A stretch of DNA of 63,327 nt, counting the filler, from Octopus bimaculoides (taxonomy: Eukaryota): the NCBI RefSeq assembly GCF_001194135.2. It is 8 parts of 7 records of this genome, joined end to end, with 100 filler letters (N's around TTAATTAATTAA, not from the genome) between each part and the next. Parts side by side here need not be neighbours in the genome. Positions count along the whole stretch, not along the records: positions 39,260 to 54,117 come from NC_069002.1; 7 more parts are not named here. One strand, written 5' to 3'. This document shows positions 48,540 through 50,165 of this stretch, piece after piece (position 1 is the stretch's first letter; each line of letters starts with the position of its first letter). A model generated the notes under the pieces. The model was not told where the DNA came from and ran no database searches. It saw nothing but the letters and a program-made list of their open reading frames with translations. The position numbers and the translations under genes were made by a program.

Positions 48540-48873
48540 ACAATTAAGATTCAGTTGAATTAGGTACTTAAATTGAGGCACCTCTTTAGGCCAGAATAAT
48601 ATACACACAACAATATTAAGTAAATATCAAAGTTGGTACATAAGTACTGGTCAGATGATATTCTTGCAGTGTATGAAGACAATTAGTCCCAGCTGAGCAA
48701 AGAAATACACTCTTGAGCTATTCAGACATGTACTTTATATTAAAAATACTGTCCATACTATTTATGAAGGATCGATTCCGAGACAGGTGAATAAAATATG
48801 AGTAGCAGTAGAGGTACACATTATTTACATTATTTACATTTGACAGATATTTATCCTCATCTTGTTTGTTGTT

Positions 48874-48918
48874 AACACAACATTTCAACTAATATACCTC
48901 CAGCCTTCATCAGGTGTC
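48874..48918 (-). ncRNA. Decayed hammerhead motif (copy 2, left arm)
   Basis: Reverse complement reads GACAC-CTGATGA-A-GGCTG...TAGTT-GAAAT-GTT-GTGTT. CAGCC has become TAGTT through C>T changes that leave G-U wobbles. Confidence 0.5.
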
Positions 48919-48983
48919 TTGGGGAAATTTTGAACCTGGGTTCTCATTCCTAAGGTATTTTTCAATGTTGTTGTTGTTGTTAC

Positions 48984-49035
<52 letters not shown>

Positions 49036-49050
49036 GTTATTATTATTATT

Positions 49051-49530
49051 TTATGTTTGACTTTTGTTTTGCATTTGTACNNNNNNNNNNNNNNNNNNNN
49101 NNNNNNNNNNNNNNNNNNNNNNNNNNNNNNNNNNNNNNNNNNNNNNNNNNNNNNNNNNNNNNNNNNNNNNNNNNNNNNNNNNNNNNNNNNNNNNNNNNNN
49201 NNNNNNNNNNNNNNNNNNNNNNNNNNNNNNNNNNNNNNNNNNNNNNNNNNNNNNNNNNNNNNNNNNNNNNNNNNNNNNNNNNNNNNNNNNNNNNATGAGC
49301 ACTATCTTTTGAACTTCAGCCATTTTGGGGTTTCCTGGTATCTGAGCTAGGTAGTAATCAGCCCGTTTCGCTGTCATTCCCAGGGCACCTATGACAATAG
49401 GTATTGTTTTCGTCTTCAGATTCCACATTTTGCTAATTTCTATTTCAAGATCTTTATATTTGCTCAGTTTTTGGTAGGTCTTGACAGATACGTTTATATC
49501 GATTGGGACAGTCATATCAATGAGGAGGCA
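49051..49530 (-). mobile_element. 5'-truncated R4/Dong-like non-LTR retrotransposon 3' end (restriction-like endonuclease domain) inserted in (TAA)n
   Basis: Minus strand translates CLLIDMTVPIDINVSVKTYQKLSKYKDLEIEISKMWNLKTKTIPIVIGALG...AEVQKIVL, the RLE-type C-terminus (D..vP.D...K..KY.dL...vpiviGalG). (ATT)n on both sides; partly in an N gap. Confidence 0.8.
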
Positions 49531-49551
49531 TTATTATTATTATTATTGTTA

Positions 49552-49605
<54 letters not shown>

Positions 49606-49713
49606 TCACTGCCTGCAATCAAAATCTACACCATATGTCCGTAGGCATATGGCGTAGTGGTTTAAAGCGAGGGCTACCAACCCCAAGATTCTGAGTTTGA
49701 TTCCAGGCAGTGA

Positions 49714-49776
<63 letters not shown>

Positions 49777-49837
49777 TAATAATAATAACATCGTAAAATA
49801 CCATAGGAATGAGAACCCAGGTTTGAAATTTCCTCAA

Positions 49838-49883
49838 GACACCTGATGAAGGCTGGAGAGTATATCAGCCGAAACGTTGTGTT
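49838..49883 (+). ncRNA. Minimal type I hammerhead ribozyme motif (copy 2, right arm)
   Basis: GACAC-CTGATGA-A-GGCTG(gagagtatat)CAGCC-GAAAC-GTT-GTGTT. Confidence 0.8.
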
Positions 49884-50165
49884 AACAACAAACAAGATGA
49901 GGACAAATGTAAATAATGTACATAATTCCTCATCTCTTACATATAGAATAGTAGAGGTACAGGTGTCAATCCATTTTGCTAACTTCTTATGACTTCTTTA
50001 ATTGATTAATAGAAGCATTACATAGTTGTAAAGAAACTGCTTCCATCAGATAAACTCATGAACTTCAAAATAAAAGACATTCAAAATGATTTAACATAAT
50101 TTCAACTGAAATAATAACAGAATCACTGCAAATGTTTTTGCTCTGTAGATTTTAAACTACGTTAA

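What the first reader, a model, noticed from the sequence alone, without database searches (positions are those of the whole stretch)
48807..49961. Independent second insertion of the same palindromic element, with its own TSD
Seen: 38 kb from copy 1, with unrelated flanks, the same left breakpoint (|CATTATTTACAT), the same axis motif (CCATATGTCC-GT-AGGCATATGG) and a similar right end (...CTCTTACATATAGAAT|), bracketed by AGTAGAGGTACA x2. Inference: two copies in 63 kb with distinct TSDs indicate a repeatedly mobilised, probably high-copy family rather than a one-off inverted duplication.
Basis: seen in the sequence. Interest (0 to 1): 0.75.

Follow-up and report, generated by a model that had tools for sequence, protein, structure and literature searches.

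The report
Octopus palindromic retroposon with hammerhead motif
This is one copy of a many-copy octopus 'jumping gene': two mirror-image halves joined head to head, each with a tRNA-like start and a Penelope-type hammerhead-ribozyme end, inserted as a unit with a 12-base target duplication and later hit by a second mobile element. It is interesting to transposon specialists but not a new kind of system.

Summary
AGTAGAGGTACA occurs at 48807-48818 and 49950-49961 and directly abuts an inverted-repeat element at 48819-49949.

The element is a head-to-head dimer. Each half reads outward from the axis: a tRNA-like head with A and B boxes, then (TAA)n, then a 160-185 nt body. The body carries a minimal hammerhead motif, a 3' stem-loop and a defined 3' end. 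The right arm runs 22-23 nt further than the left, giving a one-sided "tail".

The assembly gap lies inside a nested, 5'-truncated, (TAA)n-tailed LINE of Dong/R2-like type, not in the element proper. Both gap edges align colinearly to one continuous Octopus vulgaris sequence (235 nt there against 214 N here).

I recovered copies or fragments in all four O. vulgaris loci fetched (125 kb). They share the axis (CCATATGCCC-GT/AC-GGGCATATGG) and the 3' end, with or without the tail, and one fragment holds only the 3' end. The family is real and multi-copy.

Hammerhead, palindromic junction, one-sided tail and short TSD match published Penelope-like-element insertions. Best reading: a non-autonomous, probably Pol III-transcribed retroposon mobilised by Penelope-like RT/endonuclease. 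No partner element was identified, and Rfam and ARAGORN do not call the ribozyme or the tRNA. It is a new member of a known kind, of moderate interest.

The parts
48807..48818 (.). Left copy of the 12-bp target-site duplication AGTAGAGGTACA
   Evidence: Exact direct repeat D3; it abuts the first base of the inverted repeat.
48819..48979 (-). Left arm body (sense on the minus strand). It ends at ...AATAATG, lacks the 22-23 nt tail, and carries a decayed hammerhead at 48874-48917 (CAGCC>TAGTT, ACGT>ATGT).
   Evidence: 92% identical to the right body in inverted orientation; aligned with O. vulgaris copies in A1.
48980..49054 (-). (TTA)25 microsatellite: the element's internal (TAA)n merged with the (TAA)n tail of the nested LINE
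   Evidence: TRF; same arrangement in L003.
49055..49529 (-). Nested 5'-truncated LINE (Dong/R2-like, RLE-type, (TAA)n-tailed). 3' UTR end at 49055-49080, assembly gap at 49081-49294, C-terminal ORF fragment at 49295-49527.
   Evidence: The ORF fragment is 97% identical to an O. bimaculoides UniProt entry, and many 86-aa copies exist. Homologues lie downstream of RVT_1 ORFs and end in (AAT)n. A3 shows colinearity across the gap. The only PDB hit is an R2 protein C-terminus. Dong elements target TAA repeats.
49530..49601 (-). (ATT)24: the part of the left unit's (TAA)n upstream of the LINE insertion
   Evidence: TRF.
49602..49640 (-). Left tRNA-like head with about 35 nt deleted (A-box 3' part through the anticodon region lost)
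   Evidence: Alignment A2, row W_L_head_del.
49632..49651 (.). Axis: 20-nt junction palindrome CATATGTCC-GT-AGGCATATG, a degenerate copy of the family's CATATGCCC-GT-GGGCATATG
   Evidence: The same junction is present in L003 and L006 and partly in L004.
49643..49719 (+). Right tRNA-like head. A box TGGCGTAGTGG at 49650-49660; B-box-like AGTTTGATTCC at 49694-49704, 44 nt apart as in a tRNA.
   Evidence: Read from the sequence and from A2, where O. vulgaris copies carry GAGTTCGATTCC. The B-box region is 15/16 identical to that of a neighbouring SINE head. Not called by ARAGORN or Rfam.
49718..49788 (+). (TAA)24 internal microsatellite of the right unit
   Evidence: TRF.
49789..49949 (+). Right arm body with the complete 3' end
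   Evidence: The 3' end coincides within 1 nt with those of L006 and L005.
49839..49883 (+). Minimal type-I hammerhead motif: helix I ACAC/GTGT(T), core CTGATGA, unpaired A, helix II GGCTG(G)/(T)CAGCC, GAA, palindromic ACGT, U17. Predicted cut between 49878 and 49879.
   Evidence: The descriptor scan finds only this site in the piece and none in 2000 dinucleotide shuffles. It finds the same motif in the L006 copy and in the family consensus. MFE folding forms helices I and II. No Rfam hammerhead hit.
49895..49935 (+). 3' stem-loop AGATGAGGA (23-nt loop) TCCTCATCT; the left arm ends exactly at the border between the loop and the 3' stem
   Evidence: RNA fold -15.7 kcal/mol; arm alignment.
49927..49949 (+). 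One-sided 'tail' of 22-23 nt, present on the right arm only
   Evidence: Tail-bearing ends in W_R, L006 and L005; tail-less ends in W_L and L004_R.
49950..49961 (.). Right copy of the 12-bp target-site duplication

Best explanation
The element at 48819-49949 is one insertion of a multi-copy, non-autonomous octopus retroposon. It exists as a head-to-head dimer.

Each half-unit reads outward from the axis:
- a roughly 75-nt tRNA-like head with A and B boxes (inferred RNA polymerase III promoter);
- an internal (TAA)n;
- a 160-185 nt body that resembles the terminal repeat of a Penelope-like element (PLE): a minimal hammerhead ribozyme motif, then a stem-loop, then a fixed 3' end.

Proposed mechanism:
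1. Shown: the insertion is flanked by a 12-bp TSD.
2. Shown: the two outer ends fall at two discrete sites 22-23 nt apart, on either side of the 3' half of the stem-loop.
3. Shown: the head-to-head junction is a 20-nt palindrome that is the same in other copies.
4. Inferred: transcription starts about 11 nt upstream of the head, across the axis, so the RNA carries a palindromic 5' leader.
5. Inferred: a PLE reverse transcriptase/GIY-YIG endonuclease acting in trans cuts both target strands 12 bp apart. It primes cDNA at either of two adjacent start sites near the RNA 3' end.
6. Inferred: the palindromic cDNA ends then pair with each other or fold back and self-prime. This regenerates the mirror dimer with the same axis.

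After insertion, a (TAA)n-specific Dong-like LINE landed in the left unit's (TAA)n. That LINE is where the assembly gap lies. The left head also lost about 35 nt, and the arms diverged by about 8%, partly through C-to-T changes, so the left hammerhead is dead.
For: TSD and anatomy:
- The exact 12-mer flanks the element.

Family:
- blastn and nhmmer find heads and bodies in all four O. vulgaris loci fetched.
- The axis CCATATGCCC-GT/AC-GGGCATATG recurs in L003 and L006 and in part in L004.
- Identical 3' ends occur in W_R, L006 and L005. Tail-less ends occur in W_L and L004_R. L005 holds only a 44-nt 3' fragment.

Hammerhead:
- The descriptor gives 1 hit in the piece and 0 in 2000 shuffles. It hits the L006 copy too.
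[quoted passage not shown] That paper also reports paired minimal hammerheads 100-700 bp apart on opposite strands.

PLE insertion signature in the literature:
- Inverted 5'-truncated copy plus a one-sided 30-40 bp tail (PMC8557442).
- Inverted pLTRs, 8-10 bp TSD, a 31-bp tail and an 18-38 bp palindrome at the head-to-head junction, interpreted as self-priming (PMC3846280).
- A PLE protein that cuts and extends both strands and starts reverse transcription at two adjacent internal sites in a stem-loop, with the tail lying between them (PMC11167929).

PLE machinery in the genome:
- A bona fide PLE ('RT-X') lies in the same piece and in all four O. vulgaris loci.
- It has its own hammerhead, inverted upstream copies and long versus short 3' ends.
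- Its full-length relatives end in a CxxC plus GIY-YIG-like motif.

Head:
- The A box is exact. The B box sits at tRNA spacing and reads GAGTTCGATTCC in three of the four full-length O. vulgaris heads.
- The L006 half-unit stops 9 nt beyond the axis centre, 11 nt upstream of head position 1, about where a Pol III start would be expected.
Against: - Rfam covariance models report no hammerhead and no tRNA, even at E<=10 on short windows. ARAGORN finds no tRNA even with relaxed settings.
- I wrote the hammerhead descriptor after seeing the motif.
- Among five copies the hammerhead shows neutral decay only, with no compensatory changes.
- The tail is 22-23 nt, shorter than the published 30-40 bp.
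- The only PLE available for comparison (RT-X) has a different hammerhead and a different 3' end, so no autonomous partner sharing the 3' module was found.
- The target here is not AT-rich or a microsatellite.
- The absence of a T4 Pol III terminator in the sense strand is not significant (P about 0.48).
- Clear TSDs could not be found for the O. vulgaris copies.
- Transcription, self-cleavage and mobilisation were not tested.
Confidence: 0.6

Rival explanations
1. It is an ordinary tRNA-derived SINE mobilised by a non-LTR LINE, for example the (TAA)n-tailed Dong-like LINE found inside it. The 'body' would be the LINE's true 3' module. The dimer would arise by twin priming or template switching, and the hammerhead-like motif would be incidental.
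For: - Both LINE 3' ends seen in octopus DNA (window and L003) are followed by (TAA)n plus body in the same orientation.
- The head is SINE-like.
- A 12-bp TSD, 5' truncation and a constant 3' end also fit LINE-type target-primed reverse transcription.
- Rfam does not recognise a hammerhead.
Against: - In two distant relatives (L001, L002) the LINE ends in (AAT)n followed by unrelated DNA.
- The LINE carries an R2-like CCHC/RLE C-terminus, and Dong elements target TAA repeats. This explains both the position and the orientation of the nested copies.
- The two nested LINEs have different 5' truncations (more than 234 nt against 2.7 kb), so they are independent events or a deletion derivative.
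- Twin priming gives inversions without duplication and with variable junctions, not a constant palindromic axis.
- The one-sided tail and the hammerhead features are specific to PLEs.
Confidence: 0.2
2. It is a DNA transposon of the foldback or MITE type, with long terminal inverted repeats, moved by cut-and-paste.
For: Long inverted arms and a flanking direct repeat.
Against: - The actual termini are not inverted repeats: left CATTATTTAC against the reverse complement of the right end, ATTCTATATG.
- One arm extends 22-23 nt beyond the other.
- Fragments and half-units sharing one constant 3' end exist (L005, L006), which is a retroposition signature.
- From general knowledge, a 12-bp TSD is atypical for the known DNA-transposon superfamilies.
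Confidence: 0.05
3. It is a local accident: two independent insertions in opposite orientation, a one-off inverted duplication, or an assembly artefact across the gap.
For: The piece is from a short-read assembly with many gaps, one of them inside the element.
Against: - The same head-to-head axis is present in a chromosome-level O. vulgaris assembly at three unrelated loci.
- The unique 12-mer flanks match across the gap.
- Both gap edges are colinear with a continuous sequence elsewhere.
Confidence: 0.03

Closest known systems
Penelope-like element (PLE) insertion units with inverted pseudo-LTRs, e.g. Pen2a/Pen3a of Adineta vaga (PMC3846280); general PLE architecture (PMC8557442); PAc in vitro system (PMC11167929)
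   Same: - Head-to-head inverted copies with the 3' ends facing outward.
- A short palindrome at the junction.
- An optional tail on one side only.
- A short TSD (8-10 bp there, 12 bp here).
- A minimal hammerhead in the repeat, with a stem-loop downstream where reverse transcription can start at two adjacent sites.
   Different: - There is no PLE ORF between the repeats.
- The inner part is a tRNA-like head plus (TAA)n.
- The tail is 22-23 nt rather than 30-40.
- The junction is identical between copies rather than at variable truncation points.
- The partner PLE was not identified.
Sm-alpha / Sj-alpha SINE-like retroposons of Schistosoma (Pol III promoter plus hammerhead; summarised in PMC6765202)
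   Same: A short non-autonomous retroposon that combines an internal Pol III-type promoter with a type-I hammerhead, at high copy number.
   Different: - The schistosome elements have a canonical hammerhead with tertiary contacts and sit in tandem arrays.
- The octopus element has a minimal hammerhead without loop III and sits in inverted dimers.
- Activity was not tested here.
Metazoan non-LTR retrozymes (PMC7229834; bioRxiv 10.64898/2026.07.22.740005)
   Same: Non-autonomous elements bearing a type-I hammerhead, low GC, TSDs longer than 4 bp, and a proposed dependence on PLEs.
   Different: Retrozymes are head-to-tail tandem repeats that give circular RNAs. No tandem arrangement was seen here.
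Dong (R4-clade) TAA-repeat-specific LINEs (PMC3812793)
   Same: This applies to the nested element only: a (TAA)n tail, insertion inside a (TAA)n array in a fixed orientation, and an R2-like CCHC/RLE C-terminus.
   Different: Clade membership was not tested phylogenetically. The PDB match to R2 is weak (E 0.077).

Membership tests
PLE-type (Penelope-like) non-autonomous retroposon | Hammerhead ribozyme motif in the terminal repeat | tested here: inconclusive
   - A descriptor built from the published min-HHR rules finds one site in the piece and none in 2000 shuffles.
- The motif is present in the family consensus.
- Rfam hammerhead models give no hit.
PLE-type (Penelope-like) non-autonomous retroposon | Inverted head-to-head copies with a palindrome at the junction | tested here: met
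   The 20-nt junction palindrome is shared by the window, L003 and L006.
PLE-type (Penelope-like) non-autonomous retroposon | Optional 30-40 bp tail at one end only (two adjacent RT start sites) | tested here: met
   The tail here is 22-23 nt, shorter than published. The two discrete ends recur in other copies.
PLE-type (Penelope-like) non-autonomous retroposon | Short TSD flanking the whole inverted unit | tested here: met
   A 12-bp exact TSD in the window copy. None could be resolved in the O. vulgaris copies.
PLE-type (Penelope-like) non-autonomous retroposon | 3' module shared with an autonomous PLE of the same genome | tested here: not met
   The only PLE at hand (RT-X) has a different hammerhead and 3' end. 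Other octopus PLE families could not be searched.
PLE-type (Penelope-like) non-autonomous retroposon | Preference for AT-rich or microsatellite targets | tested here: inconclusive
   The window target AGTAGAGGTACA is neither. RT-X copies sit at (TA)n. Only one clear target is available for this family.
tRNA-derived SINE | Internal Pol III A and B boxes at tRNA spacing | tested here: met
   A box TGGCGTAGTGG at 49650-49660; B-box-like motif at 49694-49704, 44 nt apart. Three of the four full-length O. vulgaris heads read GAGTTCGATTCC.
tRNA-derived SINE | Recognisable tRNA cloverleaf | tested here: not met
   ARAGORN finds none even when relaxed, and Rfam reports no tRNA at E<=10.
tRNA-derived SINE | 3' tail shared with a partner LINE (A-rich or simple repeat at the very end) | tested here: not met
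   The unit ends in ...CTCTTACATATAGAAT, and (TAA)n is internal.
Metazoan non-LTR retrozyme | Head-to-tail tandem repeats each carrying a type-I hammerhead | tested here: not met
   No tandem copies in the window or in the O. vulgaris loci.
Foldback/MITE DNA transposon | Terminal inverted repeats at the exact ends next to the TSD | tested here: not met
   The ends differ, and the right arm overhangs by 22-23 nt.
Active hammerhead ribozyme | Self-cleavage at the predicted site | not testable with these tools
   This needs in vitro transcription of monomer and dimer constructs.

The most novel reading that the evidence does not exclude
A tRNA-headed, Pol III-transcribed SINE that parasitises Penelope-like (GIY-YIG) retrotransposition machinery instead of a LINE. 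Its mirror-dimer form would be self-perpetuating. The Pol III start site lies about 11 nt across the axis, so every transcript carries a palindromic 5' leader. That leader makes the two cDNA ends pair or self-prime, and so rebuilds the same palindrome in each new copy.
Probability: 0.3. Interest if true: 0.6.

Novelty: new member of a known kind. Interest (0 to 1): 0.4.

Why it matters
How Penelope-like elements build their odd inverted and tandem insertions is still unresolved. This short, abundant element has a fixed palindromic junction, two discrete outer ends and a clean TSD. That makes it a compact natural substrate for testing the both-strand-priming and self-priming models.

If the tRNA-like head really drives Pol III transcription, it would be an example outside flatworms of a SINE built on a Penelope-type 3' module. 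That is well short of a new class.

Practically, such near-perfect 0.5-1 kb palindromes with internal (TAA)n arrays are likely causes of gaps and mis-joins in cephalopod assemblies. When they lie in transcripts they would form long double-stranded RNA. Any bearing on the heavy A-to-I editing of cephalopods is speculation and was not tested.

Tried and rejected
Searches that found nothing or failed:
- Rfam scans of the element, its arms, its head and 125 kb of O. vulgaris DNA gave no hammerhead or tRNA. The hits were spurious CRISPR-DR, CrcZ and miRNA matches.
- ARAGORN, both default and relaxed, found no tRNA.
- Exact-pattern scans for a 22-mer (metagenome contigs) and a 24-mer (metagenome and prokaryote genome contigs) gave 0 hits.
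- A protein search with a spurious ORF read through the arm found no candidates.
- A look-up of the O. bimaculoides LINE protein P0001 found it not on record.
- Two ENA loci with LINE homologues (L001, L002) came from other species and lack the family.
- Pfam on the LINE fragment, the RTE-like fragment and the PLE ORFs gave nothing or only a sub-threshold RVT_1 hit.
- One Pfam call failed because the translation contained stop codons.
- The paper of Lunse et al. on PLE hammerhead dimers is not held.

Analyses that did not give usable support:
- A TSD search around the O. vulgaris copies found only short AT-rich matches that I do not trust.
- The absence of a T4 terminator as evidence for Pol III transcription is not significant.

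Ideas dropped:
- That the arms were formed afresh at each insertion by blunt joining of two cDNAs. The constant axis argues against this.
- That RT-X is the partner element. Its hammerhead and 3' end are different.
- That L003 is the orthologous locus. Its flanks are unrelated.
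Full report
**Observation**

AGTAGAGGTACA lies at 48807-48818 and again at 49950-49961, as a direct repeat with 12 of 12 matches. The left breakpoint is |CATTATTTACAT at 48819. The axis CCATATGTCC-GT-AGGCATATGG lies at 49631-49652. The right end ...CTCTTACATATAGAAT| is at 49949.

The outer arms are 92% identical in inverted orientation (126 of 137 aligned positions). The differences include five C-to-T changes on the left unit's sense strand.

A non-simple 12-mer direct repeat within 3 kb is not rare in this piece; about ten such pairs exist. The weight therefore comes from its position, abutting the start of the inverted repeat on the left and recurring about 23 nt beyond its end on the right. 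My own arithmetic from base composition puts that coincidence near 4e-6. No other copy of the arms lies in the piece.

**The gap**

The N run at 49081-49294 lies inside a nested element, not in the palindrome proper.
- To its right, the minus strand encodes LLIDMTVPIDINVSVKTYQKLSKYKDLEIEISKMW...KIVL. This is 97% identical to an Octopus bimaculoides UniProt entry, and many 86-aa paralogues exist. This also identifies the organism.
- The ORF runs into the gap 13 codons short of its stop.
- To the left of the gap are 26 unique bases and then (TTA)25.
- An O. vulgaris copy (L003) carries the same arrangement without a gap. Both window edges align colinearly to it (alignment A3).
- The interval missing from the window is 235 nt in L003 and contains an (AT)n run, a plausible cause of the assembly break. 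The window has 214 N.

Continuity across the gap is therefore supported by homology and by the matching unique 12-mers on both contigs. Reading frame across the gap is not a meaningful question, because the left edge is 3' UTR.

**Anatomy**

Reading each half outward from the axis gives:
- a roughly 75-nt head;
- a (TAA)n array of about 24 units;
- a 160-nt body.

The right half (plus strand, 49643-49949) is complete. The left half (minus strand) differs in four ways:
- About 35 nt are deleted from its head (alignment A2).
- The nested element sits in its (TAA)n.
- It has an 11-nt indel.
- It ends at ...AATAATG, 22-23 nt short of the right arm's end.

The right arm's extra 22-23 nt are the 3' strand of a 9-bp stem-loop (49895-49935, -15.7 kcal/mol) plus 14 more bases. 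The left arm stops exactly at the border between the loop and the 3' stem.

**The family is real and multi-copy**

No octopus DNA could be reached by pattern scans. I obtained 125 kb of O. vulgaris chromosome sequence indirectly, through homologues of a reverse-transcriptase remnant that lies in the same piece. All four loci carry the family.
- L003 and L004 hold head-to-head dimers.
- L006 holds a single half-unit interrupted by a 3.3-kb Penelope-like element.
- L005 holds a 44-nt fragment of the 3' end.

The junction is the same wherever it is present:

| Copy | Axis sequence |
|---|---|
| Window | CCATATGTCC-GT-AGGCATATGG |
| L003 | CCATATGCCC-AC-GGGCATATG |
| L006 | CCATATGCCC-GT-GGGCATATG |
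| L004 | CCATATGCCC-AG-G, then a 55-nt filler |

Each copy has a different lesion next to the axis, as expected for unstable long palindromes.

Three copies share the full 3' end within 1 nt (W_R, L006, L005). Two end at the tail-less site (W_L, and L004_R three bases further) (alignment A1).

A constant 3' end, a fragment that retains only that end, and a TSD together point to retroposition. The constant axis rules out two independent insertions, a one-off duplication and an assembly artefact.

**Hammerhead motif**

The right body contains ACAC-CTGATGA-A-GGCTG(G)...(T)CAGCC-GAA-ACGT-T|GTGT(T) at 49839-49883.

I wrote a descriptor from the published rules for minimal PLE hammerheads. Those rules are a type I motif, no loop III, an optional nucleotide after A9, the G10.1-C11.1 pair and a palindromic 15.2-16.2.
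- The descriptor finds this one site in the piece and none in 2000 dinucleotide shuffles of the 13-kb piece.
- A slightly relaxed version finds the L006 copy too.
- The motif is in the family consensus, and individual copies decay neutrally.

Cervera and de la Pena (PMC4209133) list features that emerged beyond their descriptor. Three of them are seen here: the extra nucleotide between 9 and 10.1, the G10.1-C11.1 pair and the palindromic 15.2-16.2. They also report paired minimal hammerheads 100-700 bp apart on opposite strands.

Against this, no Rfam hammerhead model matches, I wrote the descriptor after seeing the motif, and activity is untested.

**The architecture matches Penelope-like insertions**
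- Craig et al. (PMC8557442) describe an inverted 5'-truncated copy next to the unit and a 30-40 bp tail at one end.
- Arkhipova et al. (PMC3846280) describe inserts in Adineta vaga flanked by inverted pseudo-LTRs. These have 8-10 bp TSDs, a 31-bp one-sided tail and an 18-38 bp palindrome at the head-to-head junction, which they read as self-priming.
- Frangieh et al. (PMC11167929) show that a purified PLE protein cuts and extends both DNA strands. It starts reverse transcription at two adjacent internal sites in a stem-loop downstream of the hammerhead, and the tail is the segment between those sites.

The window element reproduces each point: a hammerhead, a stem-loop 17-57 nt downstream of the predicted cut, two outer ends on either side of the 3' half of that stem-loop, a palindromic junction and a 12-bp TSD.

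**A genuine PLE in the same genome**

A PLE that I call RT-X lies on the minus strand at about 50755-52465 of the piece and in all four O. vulgaris loci.
- It has PLE-type RT motifs.
- It has its own hammerhead (GGACCA-CTGATG...GTCAC...GTGAC-GAAAG...TGGCC).
- Inverted 5'-truncated copies lie upstream of it.
- It has long and short 3' ends about 57 nt apart.
- It inserts at (TA)n.
- Its full-length relatives end in a CxxC plus GIY...YIG-like motif. Pfam gives only a weak RVT_1 hit.

Its hammerhead and 3' end differ from those of the palindromic family, so it demonstrates the machinery but is not shown to be the partner.

**The head**

The head has an exact A box (TGGCGTAGTGG, 49650-49660). A B-box-like motif lies 44 nt downstream, which is tRNA spacing. 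Three of the four full-length O. vulgaris heads read GAGTTCGATTCC there. The window's B-box region is 15/16 identical to that of an ordinary SINE head at 46995-47075.

ARAGORN and Rfam do not call a tRNA. The lack of a T4 run in the sense strand is not significant. 'tRNA-derived, Pol III-transcribed' is therefore an inference.

The single half-unit in L006 stops 9 nt beyond the axis centre, 11 nt upstream of head position 1. From general knowledge, that is about where a tRNA-type Pol III start lies. If transcripts start there, each RNA begins with one arm of the 20-nt palindrome. The cDNA ends can then pair or self-prime, which would explain why every new copy has the same axis.

**The nested element**

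It is a 5'-truncated non-LTR element.
- Its relatives lie downstream of RVT_1 ORFs and end in (AAT)n.
- The longer L003 copy encodes RT motifs and a CCHC plus RPD...D...K C-terminus.
- Its only PDB match is the C-terminal part of an R2 protein, at E 0.077.
- Dong elements, including one from a snail, target TAA microsatellites (PMC3812793).

A (TAA)n-specific LINE accounts for the position and orientation of the nested copies in both the window and L003. Their 5' truncations differ (more than 234 nt against 2.7 kb).

This weakens, but does not remove, the rival in which the body is the LINE's own 3' module and the family is a standard LINE/SINE pair.

**Verdict**

- That this is a retroposon family inserted as a unit is near certain. 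I hold the mobilisation by PLE machinery with moderate confidence (0.6).
- It is a new member of a known kind. The closest relatives are PLE inverted pseudo-LTR inserts and the hammerhead-bearing SINE-like elements of schistosomes (PMC6765202).
- It is not a tandem retrozyme and not a TIR transposon.

One unexplained detail remains. The two tail-less ends (window left arm and L004 right arm) are both followed by TACCTCT in the flank.

Noticed in passing
window 50755-52465 (minus strand), N-rich 5' region to about 52570; L003-L006 about 9440-13100: Remnant of a canonical endonuclease-bearing Penelope-like element ('RT-X'). It has PLE RT motifs (LRKDHK, DVVSLYPSI, YVDN) and a long insertion between RT motifs. 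In the O. vulgaris copies it has its own hammerhead, inverted 5'-truncated upstream copies, long and short 3' ends about 57 nt apart, and (TA)n targets. L005 has a perfect head-to-head palindrome of its 3' region near 13078.
   Followed up: partly
window 48819 flank and L004 22180-22190: The two tail-less outer ends of the family (window left arm and L004 right arm) are both followed by TACCTCT in the flanking DNA. This could reflect an endonuclease target preference, microhomology with the element's GTAC...CCTC region, or chance (roughly 1e-3).
   Followed up: no
window 46995-47330: A copy of a different, ordinary tRNA-derived octopus SINE. Its B-box region (TGAGTTTGATTCCTGG) is nearly identical to that of the palindromic element's head.
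   Followed up: partly
window 50176-50600 (plus strand): An ORF fragment (…RWYGHVARMDENSCVKKC…GRGRPRKTWDEVV…) that resembles the C-terminal end of RTE-type LINE proteins, judged from memory only. It has no Pfam hit. The region also contains a 106-nt spaced duplication (50503/50527).
   Followed up: no
L002 10480-10530: In an unidentified invertebrate contig, a hammerhead-like string (CTGATGAAGATTTTTAATCGAAACGTC) sits on the opposite strand about 20 nt after the (AAT)n tail of the related LINE. Helix I is poor, so it may be chance. It could also be another case of a TAA-specific LINE landing beside a PLE-type element.
   Followed up: no
protein P0006: A UniParc entry labelled 'hypothetical protein, Escherichia coli' is 80% identical to the octopus Dong-like LINE C-terminus. 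It is most likely contamination or mislabelling in a bacterial assembly.
   Followed up: no
window 41159-41486 and 44349-46000: A (CAT)109 microsatellite gives long spurious His/Asp/Met/Ser ORFs. Several 12-mers recur at about 1 kb spacing between 44.3 and 46 kb, which suggests a diverged direct repeat.
   Followed up: no
L006 9677-13225: A half-unit of the family is split by a 3.3-kb RT-X insertion between its (TAA)n and body position 45. Its mirror half is absent beyond 9 nt past the axis. It is the only single-unit copy seen and the basis for the proposed transcription start.
   Followed up: partly
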